The notes beneath the pieces were generated by a model, which had not been told where the DNA came from, searched no databases, and saw nothing but the letters and a program-made list of their open reading frames with translations. Shown piece by piece: positions 27,524 through 39,431 of a DNA stretch of 64,000 nucleotides. A program made the position numbers and the translations under genes. Source of the stretch: Magallana gigas (taxonomy: Eukaryota); NCBI RefSeq assembly GCF_963853765.1, contig NC_088855.1:33604001-33668000 (forward strand), in the 5' to 3' direction. The number at the start of each line of letters is the position of its first letter. Position 1 is the stretch's first letter.

Positions 27524-27834
27524 GTCTTCTTTTCACAAATAGACTCACAATCGGTCTCGGAATCGAAGTTTTTCATCCATGTCTGGTCAGTCTCGCCCAA
27601 TAGTTGACTGACATGGCTGCCTAAATAAATTAATTCGGAACATCTCGTTCGCTACATTGTATGTCGATAATAATCCATGAAAATGTCCGAACGTCGACAC
27701 TTGCGAGACTTTCCGAGAAACAACATGTCTGCGCCCATGATAGGTCAGAATCGGGAATGAAGAGTAAAGCATTATCTGCAAAACCTACGACCTAATTTTG
27801 AATACCAGCTGAAGCAGTAGGAGAAGAAAAGAAA
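27524..27834. promoter_or_regulatory. Bidirectional promoter region between DGCR2 (-) and PXMP2 (+)
   Basis: The divergent start codons are only 311 bp apart, and the interval is locally CpG-rich compared with the flanks. Confidence 0.7.
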
Positions 27835-30800
27835 ATGAGTCTAAGCAAGGATAAAGGGGATAAAAACCCACTGGAGAAGGCTCTTGCTGCATATATTAAA
27901 GCCTTGCAGACAAAACCTCTATTGACAAAAGCTATCACAAGGTAAATATTGTGTAAAAAACAAACGAATTAAGCTGACTTATTTGTAATCAGCATGTATG
28001 AAATATGTTTCCGTTTTCAATTAAAGGAAATTCAATTATTTGTTCTGATTTTATTCTGAATGTAGAAAGTAGCTACAGTGCATGGTTTACTCTTCTACTT
28101 TCATTTTCCATAAAGAGTAAGGTTTGAGGTCACAAAATGGAACAAAAGACAACCAATAGACAAATGACAATAGACAAGTGATGGGTGTATCACAAAATAC
28201 AAAAATCATTGCATAAAAAGCAGGTGTCAGAGAACATAAGATGCAATTAAGGTGGCTCACTACATCGTGAAATATTTTCTCAAATCAGCAGAAATTTACT
28301 TGATTATGATAGATATCTTAATGGATAAGAAGTATTTAAGTCTAAAATGCAAAAAATGTGCAATTTTGGATGAAAAATTTATAAATTTTCAAAAATTTAA
28401 TTAAGTTAACATGAACTAAAGCTCCAGGTATATTCGAACTCATGATCTGCACATCAGAATCCCAATACTTTAACCACTGAGCTACGACGATAAACAATCC
28501 AATCAAACGATATAATCAGTTTAACAAAACATTTAAATTGCCATCTTGTGATGTAGTGTCTTAAAAAATATGTGTAGATGTAGTGAGGTACCTTAAAAAA
28601 ATGTTGTTTTTAATAACGTCACCTGATTAGATAAAGGAAACAGCGTGACTTAATTTCACAAAAAATGTAAAAGTTTGACGTGATCACGTGAATAAATTTA
28701 ATCCATATAGATGCAAAAAAAAAAAAACCTGATAGTTTGACAATAGAAGGACCAAGCCCAAAACTAAAGAATTTTCAGTTGAAGTATAGATATTTAGCAG
28801 AAAAATATTGTTAAGAGTATGCTTAATGAATAATTATTTTACATCCAGGTGTATTTACTCATTTTCAGAGGAAAAATGTTTTTAAAAATTACATTATGCA
28901 TTTATCATAGAAACCTAAATACACAAGCATTAGGATATGAATATGTTCCTTAGATTCCTAGATTCTGTGTGTCTTAATAATCATGTTAATATGTATTTTA
29001 ATTATTTCAAATATAGAATCAAAATCATCCAACTTTTGCTATCACATGTATGCAGTGAAAAAATTACTGTCAAGTTTGACCGACGTGAATGAAAGGATTA
29101 ATATTTATCTATTTCATCAAAATATGAATGATCACCTTCTTATTCTACAATGTAAAATGATATCAGAAATAATTTCATAAGACCTCTTTTTTTAAAAGAA
29201 ATCAAGTAATGACTCAGATCCTGAGTTTGAGTACATTGATAAAGAATTAAATAGTTATTGCATCATTTATAGCTTTCCTACCTGTATCATTCTGACAGTA
29301 AATTATAAAAAAAAAAAACGAAAAAACTCACTCACCTGACTATTGATACATGGATTCTAGGATGGATTCCCCAATCTCATCTAATCACTTCTATAATGAT
29401 TTTTGTTAGCTACAATTAACTTTTAATACTTGCTAGTATGTGCTACTTACTTCTTAATAATATTGACATACCAAAGACAATAATTACATGTACCAGTACA
29501 TGTTATAAATTTGACTGTGTATTAGACTGAATAATTGTTTGTATTTCAGCGGATGCATTGCTTCGATTGGAAGTTTGGTCTCTCAGCTGATTGTTCCTAA
29601 TCCAGCAACTGGTGGAAAAATTGCATGGAGGAGTGTTGCTGCTTATGGAGCATTTGGGTATAGTGTACATTGAATTATCATAATGTATATATATATATAC
29701 CGGTAATTGTATATATAAAATGTAAAAAGTGTAGTTATTTTTCTTTCATTTTGGTGTGAAGAGGAAACAATACTTCAAATTTTTTATAGTGGGTTTGATG
29801 ATAATAATCTGGATATAGCACAAAATTTGTGTCATGCTAAATTATTTCCACTAAAACAGTAGCGGGCTCAAACTTGATAATTTGAAGCAGATTAGAGCAG
29901 AGGACACATGACAGATATTTATGTAACAGCTAGTGGATCATGAGGAAAAAATGAGATTAGATAAAATCAGTTAAGGATCATCGTCAGCAATCCAAGGCCA
30001 GATTTATACAGCTTACTGATAGTGGAGCAACTCAGTGATATTTTCTCATTCTGATAAACAATTCATGCCTTATTTCAATTGGCTCCTTTACACTTTCATG
30101 AAGGAAATCAAAGCAATCTTGGTAATACGAAATGTATGCTTTCAGGAAACTAACAAGAGGCACAAGGGCCACATCACTCACATGAGCAGTGATGTCTTGA
30201 CCAAAGTATATTGGAAATTGGAACCAACTGTAAAATTAGAATCCCTTTTGTAACCCCCCCCCATTTGCCCCCAGTAAATATGATATGAATGGATTTGAGA
30301 ATTCTTCATATTTGCTTGTTTCTATTTTAGTTTCAAAACTGGTAGCTTCATAACAATTGATACTTTTTGCCTACTGTTGGTTTAATACTGGTAAAACTGG
30401 TCCAATTGTTCTAATGAAAAACTTACAATTCAAATCACAGACCCCCAACATCATCCCCACCACCCCATCCTGGGAGTCTCTAAAGGGGTAACTGCAAGAC
30501 TATACTTTAAAATTACCGTATGTAGACTTACTCAGTCTGGTACATGTATATGTACTTGCTTTGATATGTGTATTAATTTCACAAAATATAGTTTTTGAAC
30601 AAATCAAAATTTACCGTATGTTAGTAAGCTTTTGTAAATGGTAACAGGATTTTAAGCAATTGATTATACCTACAGTTAACAAAAATCTGCCGCAACCGAG
30701 AAAACCGTTACTATACTTATCTATAAACTACAGTTTTTGAACCAGCTAGTTTAACAATTGATCAAAATTATACCGGTTATAGATTCTAACCCTGAATCAT

Positions 30801-32059
30801 TTTACATGTATGTGGATCATAAGTTGAACTTCATCTTTCTATATACATTTTAGAAAAGAATCAAACCAAATATGAAGTCAAAGTTTTAAGATAAACATTT
30901 ATTTTACATTTCAGATTTGTTGTGAGTGGTCCTTTAATTCACCAGTTCTATATCCTGTTGGACAAAATGATGCCACCGAAAAAGGAAAAGGCCACAGCCC
31001 TTGATGGCATCAAGAGAGTCATTGTGGATAGACTTGTGTTTGCTCCACCCTTCCTGTTATTGTTTTTTTATGTCATTACAATTCTAGAGGTGAGTAGATA
31101 GTGTATTTTTGTTTTCAGATTTTTTTCTAATCAATCACATAATGCAAGTTTTATTATTTTTTGTTTAAAAAAAAACCTATTTTGTTTACAGAATGAAATG
31201 AGTGTATTTTTAAATTAGGATGGTACAGTATATTTTGTGGTACAGTAATATAATCATATACAATTAAGAACAGTATGTTGCATCTTATGAATTGTTAGAT
31301 TTGAGAATTGTATGAGAATTGTAGGAGTCATCATTAATATGAAACAACTAAATTTTGTGGGTTGTCACTCAGATATTTGTTGATTCAAGATTACCTGATC
31401 AGATTTTTCTGACACAAATACATGAAAAATATTATCCTTTCTCACTTAAAAAAGTACTTTTTAACAGGGTCAAGGTCACCAGGCAGCCATTGCTAGAATC
31501 AAAGAGTCCTTCTGGCCAGTCTTGAAGTTGAATATACAGGTGTGGACAGTGTTTCAGTACATCAACATCAACTATGTTCCACCAAAGGTAACCTTTTTAT
31601 CCGGATGGTCACATATGTGCTTATAATAATGAAATATTCAGGAAAAATGTTAATACTCCAAAAAAAATTTATGCTGAGACAAATGTCAATTACATTTTAT
31701 TCTTGAAATGAATGTATCGGTATGTACAATTGTAAAAAAAGGTAGTGAATGAATTGGACTTTATACATTGTATTTTACTGTGGTTTTCTGAGAGAAGAGG
31801 GTGTGTAAGGTGGAGGGAGGTTGTTTAAAAATTGACATAAAAATGAAAGAAAATTTACATTAGACTATGTATTGCCAGTGGGTCAGAAAGAAACTGAATC
31901 AAAGTCTGGATAAATGTTTTAAGTTGTAAAGGGAATTAATTTTGTTTTACTTCTTTGTTCTTTCAGTATAGAGTATTATTTGGGAATGTTCTGGCTCTGG
32001 TTTGGTCTGTATTTGTGGCGTCTAAGAGAAGGAAGATGGCCCTTGCTAGCCAGAAGTAA
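27835..32059 (+). CDS. PXMP2: Peroxisomal membrane protein 2 (Mpv17/PMP22 family)
   Basis: join(27835-27941,29550-29657,30915-31089,31468-31587,31967-32059), 200 aa, in phase. Motifs YIKALQTKPLLTKAITSG, GFVVSGPLIHQFY, VDRLVFAPPF, FWPVLKLNIQVWTVFQYININYVPPKYRVLFGNVLALVW. Confidence 0.92.
28251..28592. mobile_element. Kolobok-like MITE containing a tRNA-like internal segment
   Basis: TTAA on both flanks; TIR ggtggctcactaca / tgtagtgaggtacc; minus-strand A-box and B-box-like sequence at about 28420-28490. Confidence 0.7.
30098..30300. mobile_element. Helentron-associated (HINE/pearl-like) interspersed repeat fragment
   Basis: Begins aacaagaggcacaagggccacatcactcacatgag, a palindromic terminus I recall from oyster HINE elements. 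Confidence 0.45.
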
Positions 32060-33239
32060 CCAGTGTGTTTGATGAGAAAAAACAGTACAAACGTTCACAT
32101 TCCAGCACCATTATGAACTGTCATTAGTCATAGTTGCCAAACCTTTGTTACTTAATTTGTACATGTAATCTATGTACAGTTTAGTAACAAATACATTATT
32201 TTTTGATACAAGTGAAATCCCTAGAATTATGTATGGCATTTTTATATAAACATTTACCACTTTTAATTTCTGTGTAATTTTGTATAATATTATCATTTTA
32301 CTCAGATGTATGATTTGTTGATTTAATTGACTTAACAAAGACAGCTCTTGATATTTATGACTTTTACCAATCATCTTTGTTTTACATGGGGATTTGAATC
32401 CTACTGTCCCTGTTTTCTTAAAACCATTAAATGTACTACAAACAATAATATATGCATCATGTAGTAAGTTAATTTAACTATGTTAGTTTTTCTATGATTA
32501 TTTAAACCCACAAAAAAACTTTAATTAGGAAAATTAAAGGTACACAATTAAGTACATGTACTACTTTCTGAATATCAATGAAGATTTGAATGTGTTTCAT
32601 TCGATCTGATGATAGATAAATGAATCAGCCAATGATAAATCTTATATAATTTATCCAACAAATATGGGAGAAAATTACTAATACAGATACCAATACTTGA
32701 TGTTTAAAACATTTATTTTTTGTGGCATGATATCTTCCTTGTTACAACAATAACATCTACCATTAACAAAAATATAGGTGTTTTAATGTCAAGGGTCAGT
32801 GGAGACTGTACCATTTGTCCCACTTTGAACAGCTCTAGCCTTTCACAGAAAAACACCTGTCTGTTGTTCTGTAAAATGTTGGAGGTGTTCCAGATGCCAT
32901 TTGTCCTTGTTCAGTAAATTGTTACCGGTACCATGCACTGATAAACTTTTGTGATATTTGTTGTGTTATTTTCTTACAAATGGGAACACATTTTGTATTA
33001 TATTTAGTTAAAAGTTGTTCCAGTTACTTCAAACTGGTGAATATTATATAGTTAGTATATATGTATTATAATGATAACAATGTACATTTTTGATTACTGC
33101 GATATGTTCAAAGAAATCAATATCACAGGCGATATATACTAAAGTATTGATACTATAAATAAATGCATTCTTATTTTTTTTAAGTGATTTCTTTTTTGGT
33201 ATGATGAATGAATTATCCATCTATGTCATCTAGCTATCT

Positions 33240-33265
33240 CAGTGGCGTCGGAAGCAAATTGAAAG

Positions 33266-33303
<38 letters not shown>

Positions 33304-33579
33304 CGCTGGACTAATCCTCAGAAATCTTGACAAAAAAAAACCAAAAACAAACTTAATTCCCAAAACCATTAAAATCCTAAATGGGGGGGGGGGGGGGGGG
33401 GGGGGGGGGCTAGTATACCTATGACTCCAAGGTAAATTTAGGAACAATTATCTTTGCTGCAAGAAAAGAAAAAGTGGGGGGGGGGGACTGAACCCTCTAT
33501 GCTGCTATGTGCCTCATGGTTAGGTCTAACTTTGCCAAAAAAGGTGGAGGGGCTTAGCCCCCCGGTTCCGACGCCTATG
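33240..33579. mobile_element. MITE with CA(G/T)(T/A)GGCGTCGGAA TIRs and long internal poly-G tracts
   Basis: cagtggcgtcggaa ... ttccgacgcctatg, flanked by TATCT on both sides (33235-33239 and 33580-33584). A related inverted fragment (ttttcttgcagcaaa) lies near 9130. Confidence 0.75.
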
Positions 33580-34249: not shown

Positions 34250-34364
34250 CGTCTTCACTAGCCAAGAGTTTTCGGTCTACACTGCTCCCCATTTATAGCT
34301 AAAGGTTTACTGTCCCCGTTAATGGGGAGCGGAGTTGACCGAAAACCCTTAGCTAGCAAAGATG
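34250..34364. repeat. Palindromic hairpin element (CATCTTCGCTAGCCAAG family) with a short spacer
   Basis: tcttcactagccaagagttttcggtc...gctccccatt pairs with aatggggagc...gaccgaaaacccttagctagcaaaga. Confidence 0.75.
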
Positions 34365-34719
34365 TTATAAACTGTAAAATAGGGAATCTCTAATTATGAT
34401 ATGTTAATGTGTATGAAGCTCTCCAGATTCAACATATTTAGTCACTTTTTTGCTACACTGCGTATATATCTGTCTCTTGCACTAAGTTATGTTACAAAAA
34501 ATCAACCCCCACCCCCACCCCACCCCACTTATTTGTCATCTGTGACTTATCATCATTTTTTTCATGTCTTATTTAATTTGAGTTACTTCAAAGATATAAG
34601 ATAAAGATTGTTAAAAGAGTATTATTTTTCTTCATAAAATCGAAATGCTTATGTACAACTTAACTTATTAACGAATAAACTGGTTCTCTACAAGAGCTAG
34701 TTCTCCTGTCGCAAAAACA

Positions 34720-37629
34720 ATGATATTAAGGACAAGGTATTTTTTTTATGAATTAATATTGCTAATACATCTTTTACGCTGCAAAAAGAATTCCGTTTTT
34801 GATATAATGCCAAGATATTTCGTTAATGAATTTGCAATATTAGTCAAATGATCAAAATTCAAAATTTTCGTTCTCAACTCGAATTTTCTCTTTATAAACT
34901 TCTGTCATCCTATCTTGCCTAAAGTAATTGTACTATCGATCTTGATAGAGTATGAACACTTGGCTGTGATACACATACTTACCACCTCTTACACTGTTTA
35001 ATGAGAAAGATTATATTAAAGCTGTGAAATATGATTAATACCAAGCTGATCTAATACTGCTTCGGACAGTAATTATGTTGATTACAACTGTCAAGACTGT
35101 AATACATTTATTCGTTATTGTAGCCTTAACAGCCTTTTTAGGAGCCAGATAAGTAATGAAACAAAGAGAACTATAGTATCGAAAGTCAGAAGACAAGGTA
35201 AGACATTATATGGTCATGTGTATAGCTTTAGCTGCAGGTGGATGGATGACATAGGAACTACAGTGCCTCCCTCAGTGAAAAACTGCAATTTACGGTGCAC
35301 ATAAAATGGACTGATCAATCATATTTCCTAATACATTCTGTACAAATATTTGACTCCAAAAATTCATCGGATATTTTACTACAGTTATCGTCACTTAACT
35401 TGCTTCTGATATTCTTTTAAACACCATCTCCAGCCCCATAATCTGAAGTGGTGCAGTTTGTTCACATGTTTAAATGGTGACTCTTGATCTCGATTTAAAT
35501 TTAATGATCTCTGAATCTCAGCAATGTTCGATAACTCTAAATTATCCCTGAATTTTTTTCTTCATACCAGGACATACAATAAATCTTCTTTTTATACAGA
35601 TAAATTTACGAAGAGATGTAGTTTAAATATAATGCTCAGATATTCAATGAGCTGTTTGGCTTAGTTGCTCTATGGAGACCTACTACATGAAGATAAAAGG
35701 GTTCGAGTCACAAATCCACTGGGTTTTTTTTTTTCTAATATGATCTCAACTTGTAGATTTATTCCATTTTTAGTTATGCATTGTGGCCAAAATTGCAAAT
35801 TTGTAAAAATGCATGGATATCATAAAAAGTTCTTTTTATTTTATTTCACTAATAAAGTTTGAAGGATTAATAACATTTTTATGATGTAAAAAATACTTAA
35901 AGGCTGAGGATAAGAGAACCTTAGCATACTTCATTTTCTGAGGTCAGGTAGTGTGTTTTGGAGAAAGTTTGAGGCAAGTAAAGTTAGATATCAGTAGGAA
36001 ATTACCTATTGAGTGCAGCAGCTGCACAGATTACAGACAATTTGTCCACTGTAAAAATTATAGCCCTTATCCAATTCCCACTTAAGCACCCATCTTCACT
36101 AACCAAGGGTTTTCAGTCCACTTTGCTCCCCATATGGGGAGCAAAGTGGACCAAAAACCCTTGGCTAGCGAAGATGGGGAGCAAAGTGGACCAAAAACCC
36201 TTGGCTAGCGAAGATGGGGAGCAAAATGGACTGAAAACCCTTGGCTAGCGAAGATGTTAACCACCTTGCCCTCATCTAAAAACAAACCTTGCCGAACCAA
36301 AATACAAGTACTTGCCCTCACCCACATATCATCTTTAACCCTAGATAGAATGTTCTATCGTTAAAATGACAAATGTCCTACGGACCCAGTTAAGACTGTG
36401 ACCTGTGACCTTATGTAGCCTGGTCAGGGTAAGATTATTTTTTCTATTTTAACCCCATCTTCTCCATCAAATCAAACATTTTTGAAGGTTTTAAAATGAA
36501 ATTACTTAAAAATTTATTATACTGGTACTGAACTTGCGAAAATGATATGTTGCTGCCATATAGCAGAGTACTGTATACAGGGAAGTATTCACCCCCCCCC
36601 CCCATGTTATTTTAACCCCTTTTGCCCTCATTGTCAGCGAGCATTTAAGACCAGGCGAATTCCAGTCGCTCATATTATCACTCTTTAAACATACAATGTA
36701 ACTGCATCTGGGTGAATTCAAGATGGGGCAAAACTGTTTGCAAGTGCAGATGGGGGAAAATTACACGGGGTGAAAATAACCCTGTACTCAATATTATTTA
36801 AGGAATAGGGAATCATTCTTTGACTGAGTATTATGAGGTGAAATCCAATAAAGCCCAAAGGGCTTTATAATAGATTCGAAAACACTCCGACCGAAATTAT
36901 CACCTCATAATATTCAAAGGATGATTCCTTAAATACTTATATTTATATTATTTCCAATTTGTACACTTTAAAACAACATAATTTAATGTAAAATATATCA
37001 GGTTACAAACACCTAATTTAATATATTTTTGGGCTAACACAGCCACATTTTGATACCAAGGTAAATTAACCCATCATCAATTCTTATACGAATAGGTTGC
37101 ATTAAATGATAATTATTTATTCTTTCTAAAGATGGATTGCTTCGTCCAAAACAACAGCCAGATAACCCTTTAATATTTGAAAGGTCGGTGCAGAATAGAG
37201 ACTTGATTTGGTTTGGAGTTTGGACGCTCTGTTTCTTTGAAGCTGTTTACCTTGCCAAAAGATGGTATGCGAGATACACAAGCAATGAAAAGTACATCAG
37301 GTAATGTTTTTGAAAGTTTTTGGATTATGGTATTGTAAAAGGCACATTGATAAATAATAGCATTGTTGTATGTATTATACAGTCAAACTTCATTATCTCG
37401 AACTAGATGGGACTGTTTTAAAACTTCAAGATATTTAAGTATTCAAGATATTAAGGGTAAAATGCTAAAAATTAAGTGGTTGGAACTTACATATGACTTC
37501 GCCATATCCACTGTATTCGAGATATCAGTGTTCAAGATAAGTTCAACTATACAAGTTAAACATTTTATATTTTTTCTTTTTTTACATAGGGCAAGATTTC
37601 CCTCCTTTGTCATTAGCACGGAATTCTAA
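34720..37629 (+). CDS. Uncharacterised 93-aa single-pass membrane microprotein, possibly mitochondrial (weakly COX7C/COX7A-like)
   Basis: join(34720-34736,35142-35197,37132-37300,37590-37629), 282 nt. Canonical GT-AG introns with matching phases 2,1,2, and AATAAA about 90 nt after the stop. Product MILRTRSQISNETKRTIVSKVRRQDGLLRPKQQPDNPLIFERSVQNRDLIWFGVWTLCFFEAVYLAKRWYARYTSNEKYIRARFPSFVISTEF. Confidence 0.68.
36091..36256. repeat. Palindromic hairpin element with the right arm amplified to three 40-bp tandem copies
   Basis: Left arm 36091-36133 abuts the right arm with no loop. Unit atggggagcaaagtggaccaaaaacccttggctagcgaag starts at 36134, 36174 and 36214. Confidence 0.9.
36569..36790. mobile_element. 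MITE, TACTGTATACAGGG family
   Basis: tactgtatacaggg...aaaataaccctgtac; a related fragment (ttgaatt..gcccagat/gcaaacggttt) lies at about 15729-15830. Confidence 0.65.
37378..37551. mobile_element. MITE, TACAGTCAAAC family, inside intron 3 of the microprotein gene
   Basis: tacagtcaaacttcattatctcgaac ... gttcaagataagttcaactata; imperfect inverted ends. Confidence 0.65.
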
Positions 37630-39431
37630 AGAACATGTAGAGATCTAAAGAACATTCTTAATTCATCTAAAGAACAGATGAACTAAGTTACATATATGTG
37701 TATTATTCCTTTTAATGAAATAAAATAAAATGAAATTATGATTTTACTGAGTGCAACTTAAATTGATGTACATTTTATCAAATAAGAGTGTTTATATCAT
37801 TAATTATTTCTTTAACCAGGGGTTTTCGGTCCTCTCTACTCCTCATTTTCACTAATTGATCAGATTTGAAGCAGCTTTTATAAAGTCTACTAATAAATGT
37901 ATAGCATTTGTTCATATTTTTAGCAACATAAAAACAATATCTGACAGTAAATGTACTGAAAATTGGCAAGAAATTACATCTTTAAGATCGACATCTCCTG
38001 AAATGAAGATTATGAAAAACAATTTATTGATTAAAGATCAATATATACCTTTTACAGACTTAAAACTAAAACTTATTGTGTTTGAAGACAATGTTAAATG
38101 TACATGTGTATTACAGAAAATTAATGGTTAATGTCATACTAATTCATTGAATGAAAATGGGTATATAAATAAATACCCTTCCCTCAATCCTCAACAATAG
38201 AAAGAGGGTCTATTTATATTTATTTCATATGCAATGTTCATTTATTCAAAGGGGATTCTGATGTACAAAGGATGTTTTCTTTTGAGAATCTCTCTCTCTC
38301 TCTCTCTCGATCGAGAAAAAAGATGGCTTTATTCTGCCTATCCCGCTCTTGATAATATGTATTCCTAAAATACATGGACAATGTATCACCATGAAAAATT
38401 ATGCAATATATTTATTCCAAAAAAAAAATCGACATTCCCCTGCCAATGAAGAGACCGTGCCCAACAAATATAGAACAATTACTGTGCGAATAGACACCAG
38501 GGTCCTCTTCATTTAGCACGAGTTCTCGTCATTTAGCACGAGTCGGTCAGCGCCGATCTTCGGCCCCATGACAGGTGCTTCATTCATATTCTGGCGTCAG
38601 AACCCTCCCCAATAAAAAGGACAGCCCCGGCCGCTGAGTCTTTCCCTCGGAGAGACTCTGGTTGGTTGCCATGTTTTCTTGTTCAGACGCCATAGGTACG
38701 TTTTATTTGATTATAATCTAGCAACAATTAATTTAACCTTATTTTTTTTTTGTATTAAATACAAGTAACATATCTTGACGTGAAAAATTCAAACGCGAAT
38801 AATGTTGTTTATAAGTCAATACGAAATATTACATGTTTTTCAACATATGACTAAAATTCACAGTATAATTTTCATTTTAAATGTCGTTTATATATACTAT
38901 AGTGTTGGCTATATTACATTTCAAAAATTCATTACCATGTGATTTAAACAGCGATTTTTTAAAAAACAATTTGAGTTTTGTTTTTCGAGAATAAACAAAG
39001 TTTTCACATTTTGTATTCAATCGTCTGATATGTCTGAATAAGAACTTTCAATTTACATGCATTGTTCCATGTACTTATATGTTAAAAAGGCGATAAAAGA
39101 ATTGCATGTATGTAACATCAAGACCAGAGCTAGTGAAGAAATAAACATATAAATATATAAAATAAAGCATATTTTGGGTGTATCAGATACGAAAAAATCC
39201 AATGGTTTACTTTAGGAGAGGTAAAGGAAAGATATTCTCTTAGCTTAATTGCTTGCCTTTTATAAAAAACGAAAAAGAACAAAATTACTTTTTTATTATA
39301 GTAATTAGTGTATCAATATACAGGGCGCAAAGTTCATCTAAGGTACAAACTCATTATTTCATTCATTATTAAAAAACGCACGTCGTAAAAATTATTTGTA
39401 GATTTTTTTTTTCATTGTTGATTACATGAAT

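What the first reader, a model, noticed from the sequence alone, without database searches (positions are those of the whole stretch)
34720..37629. Hidden four-exon gene for a 93-aa mitochondrial-type single-TM microprotein
No listed ORF captures it. Seen in sequence: four short exons join with canonical splice sites and matching phases (2,1,2); exon 3 is open in only one frame, the required one; AATAAA follows the stop. The product has an Arg/Ser/Thr-rich N-terminus that resembles a mitochondrial presequence, one aromatic-rich TM helix (LIWFGVWTLCFFEAVYLA) and a basic tail. Inference: SKVRRQ...PDNPLIFERSVQNR loosely echoes COX7C (SVVRRS...PGKNLPFSVENK), and KRTIVSKVRR echoes the COX7A2 presequence (QRTISTASRR). 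The TM segment matches neither well, so it may be a highly divergent or lineage-specific respiratory-chain accessory subunit.
Basis: partly seen in the sequence, partly recalled or inferred. Interest (0 to 1): 0.75.

Follow-up and report, generated by a model that had tools for sequence, protein, structure and literature searches.

The report
Real oyster microprotein gene, mitochondrial-looking
The four-exon gene is real and conserved among oysters, but one splice site was misplaced, so the product should be 99 rather than 93 amino acids; it looks like a mitochondria-targeted, single-helix membrane protein of an unstudied family, not a recognisable COX7C or COX7A relative.

Summary
The gene exists. 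Searching only the exon-3 peptide found oyster relatives. One is a RefSeq four-exon model in Saccostrea echinata (LOC133205169, "uncharacterized"), in the same place downstream of an Mpv17/PMP22 gene. Another is a 99-aa protein from a spliced RNA contig of a closely related oyster.

That contig aligns to the window as 34709-34736 | 35122-35197 | 37130-37314 | 37583-37726. This supports junctions 35197/37132 and 37300/37590. The coding sequence is then 300 nt (99 aa).

Exons 2-3 have no indels or stops in four lineages. dN/dS is about 0.3 against the distant oysters but about 1 against the close relative.

The N-terminus is basic and nearly acid-free, with a conserved TOM20-type motif and an R-x-I-(V/A)-S site. 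A moderately hydrophobic helix follows, with its invariant residues (D, W, W, C, E, L, R, R) on one face. Pfam and PDB sequence searches found no family, and the fold searches were uninformative. ESM features point weakly to small mitochondrial subunits (SDH7, COX7B-like, ESSS). COX7C/COX7A2 kinship is unsupported.

The window's exons were never joined for any search.

The parts
34686..34719 (+). Conserved block just upstream of the ATG (AACTGGTTCTC...GCTAGTTC.CCTG), probably 5'UTR and/or core promoter. At least the last 11 nt are transcribed in the congener.
   Evidence: It aligns with the Saccostrea locus at about 75-85% although dS between the two is about 1. L005 matches 34709-34736 at 100%.
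34720..34736 (+). Coding exon 1: ATG plus 14 nt (M-I-L-R-T, then AG of a split codon). Donor AAG|gtattt, phase 2.
   Evidence: The layout is identical in Saccostrea (ATG AAT TCG AGG ACA AG|gtattt) and the sequence is identical in the congener transcript.
35124..35197 (+). Coding exon 2, corrected to 74 nt: acceptor ttattgtag|C, donor AAG|gtaaga. It encodes (S)LNSLFRSQISNETKRTIVSKVRRQ and holds the TOM20-type motif LNSLF and the R-T-I-V-S site.
   Evidence: L005 2236-2311 aligns to 35122-35197 at 93%. Acceptors are aligned in Saccostrea, and L004 has a 74-nt exon 2. In-frame translation.
37132..37300 (+). Coding exon 3 (169 nt; phase 1 in, phase 2 out). It holds the conserved G-x-L-R-P-x-Q..D-x-P..F-E-R segment and the membrane helix with invariant D, W, W, C, E, L, R, R.
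   Evidence: Hits at 75%, 62% and 55% identity. AG|AT and AG|GTAA borders are kept in three genomic relatives. No indels. dN/dS 0.28-0.30 against distant oysters.
37590..37629 (+). Coding exon 4 (37 nt plus the TAA stop): acceptor tttttacatag|G; tail (R)ARFPSFVISTEF.
   Evidence: The junction is seen in L005 and L001. Tails of similar type occur in the congener, in L004 and, longer, in Saccostrea.
37630..37750 (+). 3'UTR with two overlapping AATAAA signals at 37719 and 37724. The end near 37750 is estimated.
   Evidence: Congener contigs align through 37726 and stop about 20-30 nt later; L001 ends in a short A run.

Best explanation
This is a genuine four-coding-exon oyster gene: 34720-34736, 35124-35197, 37132-37300 and 37590-37629 on the + strand. 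It encodes a precursor of about 99 aa belonging to an uncharacterised family so far seen only in oysters (RefSeq LOC133205169 in Saccostrea echinata is a member). Shown here: the exon structure, conserved splice sites and phases, spliced transcripts in a close congener, conserved position next to an Mpv17/PMP22 gene, and long-term purifying selection. Inferred: the first 22 or so residues act as a mitochondrial presequence, being basic and almost acid-free, with an L-x-x-L-F/L TOM20-type motif and an R-x-I|(V/A)-S processing-type site. After import, the single moderately hydrophobic helix would sit in the inner membrane. Its one conserved face (D54, W57, W61, C64, E67, L71, R74, R78 in P0008 numbering), including a membrane-embedded Glu and Cys, would pack against a partner membrane protein. 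That would make it a small accessory or assembly-type subunit, not an enzyme. My confidence that the gene is real and coding is about 0.95. My confidence in the mitochondrial single-pass reading is about 0.55, and that is the figure given for the whole statement. The partner is unknown.
For: Family hits with the exon-3 peptide alone: E 1.6e-23 to 1.5e-11. P0003 is RefSeq 'uncharacterized protein LOC133205169 [Saccostrea echinata]'; its gene sits downstream of a PF04117 gene, as in the window. The spliced congener contig L005 aligns to all four exons, and P0008 is 99 aa. Splice borders are conserved in L002, L003 and L004. dN/dS summed per exon is 0.32 against Saccostrea and 0.31 against L004, with no indels in exons 2-3. 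22 of 55 exon-3 residues are invariant. Conservation has helical periodicity: only 78 of 5000 shuffles reach it. Presequence-type features are conserved in the lineages that carry exon 2. AlphaFold2 gives a long helix over residues 43-80 with pLDDT up to 93. ESM feature neighbours are all small mitochondrial single-helix subunits, scores 0.86-0.89. Exon 3 GC is 0.40 against 0.27-0.35 for the introns.
Against: No protein from this species was in the collections. Against the close congener dN/dS is 0.97, and exon 3 (88.8% identity) is no better conserved than its flanking introns (85.9% and 91.5%), so recent constraint is weak or selection is diversifying. The mitochondrial call rests on simple rules and sub-threshold language-model neighbours; no dedicated predictor was available. 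The flank after the helix is much more basic than the flank before it, which does not fit the usual stop-transfer orientation (N-terminus in the matrix). Best-window helix hydrophobicity is only 1.07-1.55 on the Kyte-Doolittle scale. Pfam and PDB sequence searches gave no family, and the fold searches were uninformative.
Confidence: 0.55

Rival explanations
1. It is a real gene, but the product is a single-pass protein of the ER, secretory pathway or another non-mitochondrial membrane. The basic N-terminal 50 residues would then be a cytosolic domain, not a presequence.
For: The hydrophobic segment lies far from the N-terminus and the flank after it is strongly basic. No mitochondrial family was matched. 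ESM scores are below the tool's 0.9 level.
Against: The N-terminal features are conserved across lineages: almost no acidic residues, an amphipathic L-x-x-L-F motif and an R-x-I-(V/A)-S site. Helix hydrophobicity is only moderate, which is more typical of inner-membrane proteins than of ER signal anchors (established knowledge). All named ESM neighbours are mitochondrial.
Confidence: 0.25
2. It is a very divergent orthologue or paralogue of a known small respiratory-chain subunit, such as COX7B or the protostome COX7B-like Deltameth_res family, COX7C, COX7A or NDUFC1. It would then not be a separate family.
For: ESM neighbours include Deltameth_res (0.89) and a COX7B/NDUFC1 cluster (0.86). An invariant Asp sits at the start of the helix, as described for COX7B and CG7630 (PMC9346487). 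That paper shows such subunits can be related at HHpred E-values near 1.
Against: No hit to PF16020, PF05392, PF02935, PF02238 or PF15088 at E up to 10 for three members. No solved oxidase or complex I chain matched at E up to 10. PMC9346487 reports that ordinary CG7630 homologues are detectable in Mollusca by Jackhmmer, so oysters probably already have a recognisable COX7B-like gene. The D-x-x-L-x-x-G spacing described there is not reproduced; the family has D-x-x-W-(L/F/V)-(G/T).
Confidence: 0.12
3. The transcript is real but the open frame is not translated or not functional. It would be a non-coding RNA or a decaying gene in this lineage.
For: dN/dS is about 1 against the close congener, and exon identity equals intron identity. 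Codon-usage score is unremarkable. Very few contigs in public data carry it.
Against: The frame is intact with no indels in four lineages separated by dS of about 1 or more. dN/dS is about 0.3 over those distances (z about -3 against neutrality from the counts). The 22 invariant residues are all kept in the window. Of the polarisable changes, 6 fall on the congener branch and 3 on the window's. Splice phases are conserved.
Confidence: 0.05

Closest known systems
RefSeq 'uncharacterized protein LOC133205169' of Saccostrea echinata (P0003, 102 aa)
   Same: It has the same four coding exons: a 17-nt first exon ending ..AGG ACA AG|gt, a 74-nt second exon and a 169-nt third. The phases are the same and so is the upstream Mpv17/PMP22 neighbour. 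Exon 3 is 62% identical and the invariant residues are shared.
   Different: The C-terminal tail is different and longer (15 against 12 residues after the exon-3/4 junction). It has no name, no Pfam domain and no literature.
COX7B and the protostome COX7B-like family (CG7630; Pfam Deltameth_res PF16020, COX7B PF05392)
   Same: Small nuclear-encoded precursor with a presequence, a conserved stretch before a single helix, and an Asp at the start of the helix. It is among the nearest ESM feature neighbours.
   Different: No HMM match at E up to 10. The residue spacing on the helix differs. Molluscs are reported to have ordinary CG7630 homologues (PMC9346487), so this is probably a different gene.
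   Same: Only the general build: a basic N-terminus, one helix and a small size.
   Different: No Pfam or PDB sequence match of any strength.
Other small presequence-bearing single-helix OXPHOS subunits (plant SDH7, NDUFB11/ESSS, NDUFC1)
   Same: They are language-model feature neighbours at 0.86-0.89 and share the overall architecture.
   Different: The scores are below the tool's reliability level and the neighbours belong to unrelated families, which the tool itself reads as 'that family is probably wrong'. No HMM match.

Membership tests
Oyster LOC133205169-like microprotein family (unnamed) | Significant sequence similarity over exon 3, with the shared invariant residues | tested here: met
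   E 4.1e-15 to P0003 and 1.6e-23 to the congener. 22 invariant columns.
Oyster LOC133205169-like microprotein family (unnamed) | Same exon-intron layout and phases, and the same genomic neighbour | tested here: met
   Exons of 17/74/169 nt, conserved AG/GT borders and an Mpv17_PMP22 gene upstream in both genomes.
COX7C (PF02935) | Match to the family profile or to solved COX7C chains | tested here: not met
   No PF02935 hit at E up to 10. No PDB chain at E up to 10 by sequence or profile.
COX7A (PF02238) | Match to the family profile or to solved COX7A chains | tested here: not met
   no hit.
COX7B / COX7B-like (PF05392, PF16020 Deltameth_res) | Match to the family profile | tested here: not met
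   No hit at E up to 10 for P0008, P0003 or the P0004 part. ESM feature neighbours at 0.86-0.89 are only a lead.
COX7B / COX7B-like (PF05392, PF16020 Deltameth_res) | Asp at the matrix end of the helix with the Leu and Gly spacing that docks on COX4 (PMC9346487) | tested here: inconclusive
   An invariant Asp precedes the helix, but the following spacing is D-x-x-W-(L/F/V)-(G/T), not D-x-x-L-x-x-G. No profile-profile comparison was possible.
COX7B / COX7B-like (PF05392, PF16020 Deltameth_res) | Physical presence in cytochrome c oxidase | not testable with these tools
   This needs complexome profiling or co-purification.
NDUFC1 (PF15088) | Match to the family profile or to solved complex I chains | tested here: not met
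   no hit.
Mitochondrial presequence-targeted proteins (a class, not a family) | N-terminus net positive, nearly acid-free and amphipathic, with a hydrophobic-x-x-hydrophobic-hydrophobic TOM20 motif and an Arg at -2/-3 of a processing site | tested here: inconclusive
   Simple-rule scan: net +6/+7 in the first 30 residues; LSSLF / LFGLL / LNSLF / LNNLF at residues 7-11; R-x-I-(V/A)-S at residue 21. TargetP and MitoFates were not available.

The most novel reading that the evidence does not exclude
The protein is an oyster-lineage supernumerary subunit or assembly factor of a respiratory-chain complex. Its fast amino-acid turnover between close species (dN/dS about 1) would then reflect co-evolution with fast-evolving, mtDNA-encoded membrane partners. 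The conserved Asp/Trp/Cys/Glu/Arg face of its helix would be the docking surface.
Probability: 0.2. Interest if true: 0.6.

Novelty: new member of a known kind. Interest (0 to 1): 0.38.

Why it matters
Small spliced genes like this one are routinely missed by ORF lists and often by annotation pipelines. Here a reader working from sequence alone recovered one almost exactly. If the mitochondrial reading holds, oysters carry a lineage-restricted inner-membrane microprotein with a charged, conserved helix face. That makes it a candidate taxon-specific accessory factor of oxidative phosphorylation. The COX7B-like story in flies (PMC9346487) shows such subunits can stay hidden for years because their sequences diverge quickly. 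The finding is directly testable by complexome profiling of oyster mitochondria. If the reading fails, this is an ordinary orphan membrane microprotein.

Tried and rejected
1. Pfam on the exon-3 peptide and on three family members: only chance-level rows (INCENP_N at E 0.089, DUF2887 at E 0.062).
2. PDB sequence search with the single peptide and with the family profile: nothing at E up to 10.
3. Word-index protein search with the 55-aa exon: blank. The real proteins are 99-134 aa, outside its 30-96 aa length window. The blank meant nothing.
4. ESM Atlas with exon 3 alone: no usable hit.
5. Codon-usage log-odds trained on the window's large exons: uninformative, rank 39 of 197. The training set is dominated by disordered Ser-rich proteins.
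6. Foldseek against PDB, and the Atlas shape search, with the AlphaFold2 model (mean pLDDT 68): only generic long-helix matches, no E at or below 0.001.
7. JGI metagenome scan with the family profile: 226 pattern matches, none confirmed.
8. Literature search for the run, sample, assembly and gene identifiers: nothing.
9. Exon 1 could not be located in L004.
10. The idea that the exons are 3' exons of the upstream Mpv17-like gene was rejected. That gene has its own stop at about 32056, and Saccostrea annotates two separate genes.
11. A repeat or transposon origin was rejected: the repeats lie in the introns and flanks, not in the exons.
13. All whole-protein analyses used the natural orthologues P0008 and P0003. 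dN/dS was computed exon by exon and only the counts were summed.
Full report
**What is in the sequence**

The window is AT-rich animal DNA (GC about 0.32). All have GT..AG borders and the stated phases.
- Exon 1, 34720-34736: ATG...AAG|gtattt.
- Exon 3, 37132-37300: ctaaag|A...CAG|gtaatg.
- Exon 4, 37590-37629: acatag|G...TAA.

Exon 3 is open in only one forward frame, and one reverse frame is nearly open too. AATAAA follows at 37719 and 37724.

None of this is beyond chance by itself. The window holds 197 stop-free stretches of 55 codons or more outside the known large exons. A codon-usage score ranks the exon-3 frame only 39th among them. A local GC rise (0.40 in exon 3 against 0.27-0.35 in the introns) is only suggestive. 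The exons are not part of the MITE-like repeats, which lie in the introns and flanks.

**Evidence that the gene is real**

First searches with the 55-aa exon-3 peptide (window:37134-37298) were blank:
- Pfam, the PDB sequence search and the ESM Atlas found nothing.
- The word-index protein search also found nothing. That blank turned out to be a length artefact: the tool only sees proteins of 30-96 aa, and the real relatives are 99 aa or longer.

The exhaustive HMMER search of 1.84 billion representatives then returned four true relatives, at E 1.6e-23 to 1.5e-11, plus three repeat-protein false positives.
- P0003 is RefSeq "uncharacterized protein LOC133205169 [Saccostrea echinata]". Its gene spans about 2 kb on a 69.7-Mb scaffold. 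It lies directly downstream of a PF04117 Mpv17/PMP22 gene.
- The window has the same neighbour on the same strand, with coding pieces from about 27802 to 32056. BLAST aligns both genes between the two loci.
- Mapping P0003 back on its locus gives a first coding exon ATG AAT TCG AGG ACA AG|gtattt. It has the same length, phase and donor as the window's exon 1.
- About 35 nt upstream of the ATG are also conserved.

A profile word search added P0008, a 99-aa protein. It comes from Logan contig L005 (run SRR14492784).
- L005 aligns to the window in four blocks: 2210-2237 = 34709-34736 (100%), 2236-2311 = 35122-35197 (93%), 2310-2494 = 37130-37314, and 2473-2617 = 37583-37726.
- The contig therefore lacks all three introns. 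Around the joints it reads ...GGACAAG|CCTTAGC......GACCAG|ATGGATT... and ...ACATCAG|GGCAAGA....
- A second contig, L001 (SRR8427105), shows the exon 2/3 and 3/4 joints as well and ends in a short A run.
- The rest of L005 is an intronless Rab3-like mRNA in the opposite orientation that does not match the window. L005 is thus an RNA-derived chimeric contig, not a genomic retrocopy.
- Two genomic contigs, L003 (same congener) and L004 (a more distant oyster-like animal in an ENA metagenome), keep the AG|AT and AG|GTAA borders of exon 3.

**Correction to the model**

In the congener transcript, exon 1 is joined to CCTTAGCAGCC.... That corresponds to window 35124, not 35142.
- The Saccostrea acceptor aligns with the window's ttattgtag|CC.
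- L004 also has a 74-nt exon 2.
- With this acceptor the coding length is 17+74+169+40 = 300 nt, that is 99 codons plus the stop.
- The extra six codons give (S)LNSLF..., matching LSSLF, LFGLL and LNNLF in the relatives.
It cannot be excluded as a minor alternative in this species.

**Selection**

dN/dS was computed per exon, and only the counts were summed.
- Against Saccostrea it is 0.32 (pN 0.26, pS 0.55). Against L004 it is 0.31. From those counts the deficit of non-synonymous changes is about three standard deviations.
- Exons 2 and 3 have no indel or stop in four lineages.
- Against the close congener the picture differs: dN/dS is 0.97 (24.5 non-synonymous against 6.5 synonymous differences). 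Exon 3 is 88.8% identical, while its flanking introns are 85.9% and 91.5% identical.
- Polarising with the two outgroups, 6 changes fall on the congener branch, 3 on the window's and 8 are undecided.
- All 22 residues invariant across the family are kept in the window.

I read this as a protein with a fixed core and freely changing remaining positions, possibly with recent acceleration. It does not look like a dead gene.

**What the protein looks like**

P0008 and P0003 were used as natural stand-ins.
- The first 30 residues carry 7 Lys/Arg and 0-1 acidic residues. They are Ser/Thr-rich and are modelled as a helix.
- Residues 7-11 form a hydrophobic-x-x-hydrophobic-hydrophobic motif of the kind TOM20 recognises. 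This motif is conserved in all four lineages that have exon-2 sequence. R-x-I-(V/A)-S at residues 21-25 resembles an Arg-3 processing site. The link to TOM20 and to processing rests on established knowledge, not on a predictor.
- A conserved S-K-V-R-R-x-D-G-x-L-R-P-x-Q..D-x-P..F-E-R stretch follows. After it comes a long helix, residues 43-80, with pLDDT up to 93.
- The best 19-residue hydrophobic window of that helix scores 1.07-1.55 on the Kyte-Doolittle scale, which is only moderate.
- Invariant residues recur every 3-4 positions along the helix: F46/E47/R48, Q51, D54, W57, W61, C64, E67, L71, R74, R78. The periodicity peaks near 103-110 degrees, and 78 of 5000 shuffles reach it. One face of the helix is therefore conserved, including a Glu and a Cys inside the hydrophobic stretch. 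This is what one expects of a helix that docks on a partner.

**Comparison with known families**

- Pfam gives nothing real for three members at E up to 10.
- The family profile matches no solved chain at E up to 10.
- Foldseek and the Atlas shape search return only generic long helices.
- The ESM feature search with P0008 gives neighbours at 0.86-0.89. These are plant SDH7, Deltameth_res, ESSS/NDUFB11 and a COX7B/NDUFC1 cluster.
- According to PMC9346487, Deltameth_res is the protostome COX7B-like subunit.
- All named neighbours are small, presequence-bearing, single-helix mitochondrial subunits. They belong to unrelated families, however, and the scores are under the tool's own reliability line. 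I take this as weak support for the class and none for any one family.
- The same paper reports ordinary CG7630 homologues in Mollusca. That argues this gene is not the oyster COX7B-like.

**Verdict**

The gene is real and conserved in oysters. It is already predicted, unnamed, in one RefSeq genome. No family membership beyond that unnamed oyster family could be shown.

The most likely mechanism is a presequence-imported, single-pass inner-membrane microprotein that binds a partner through one conserved helix face (about 0.55). A non-mitochondrial membrane protein is the main rival (about 0.25). A very divergent known OXPHOS subunit follows (about 0.12), then a non-functional frame (about 0.05).

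**What could not be done**

- No dedicated targeting predictor was available.
- No profile-profile comparison with the small-subunit families was possible.
- The joined product of the window's exons was deliberately not built or searched.

Noticed in passing
window 27802-32056 (+): An Mpv17/PMP22-family gene in five coding pieces (about 27802-27942, 29515-29670, 30895-31098, 31465-31623, 31940-32056). It lies immediately upstream on the same strand, and the same neighbour precedes the Saccostrea orthologue, so synteny is conserved.
   Followed up: partly
window 46323-49529 (+): A gene with a carbonic-anhydrase-type domain (exon-like ORFs at 46323-46556, 46577-46774, 46972-47118 and 47324-47617). 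It runs into a 632-aa low-complexity ORF at 47631-49529, possibly a receptor-type or CA-related protein.
   Followed up: no
window 34252-34362, 36078-36256, 37808-37848: A family of MITE-like palindromic repeats, with 40-nt units in three tandem copies at 36134-36253. They flank the gene and sit inside intron 2; none touches an exon.
   Followed up: partly
window 34686-34716: A block of about 30 nt just 5' of the ATG (AACTGGTTCTC..GCTAGTTC.CCTG) is conserved with Saccostrea although synonymous sites are saturated. It may be a promoter or 5'UTR control element.
   Followed up: partly
L005:1-2209 and L001:1-1868: Both Logan RNA contigs are chimeric. L005 carries a complete Rab3-like mRNA in reverse orientation, fused 11 nt before the ATG. 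L001 carries 1.9 kb that does not match the window, fused inside exon 2, with in-frame TGA TGA.
   Followed up: partly
P0002, P0004 (L001, L004): The collection's gene caller read TGA as Trp on these AT-rich animal contigs (seen directly in L001). This inflates the products to 134 and 184 aa and hides the true ends. Lengths of such Logan and ENA proteins should not be trusted.
   Followed up: partly
window 33229-33447: Long poly-G/poly-C runs give spurious poly-Pro and poly-Gly ORFs on both strands. This is low-complexity sequence between the two genes.
   Followed up: no
   Followed up: no
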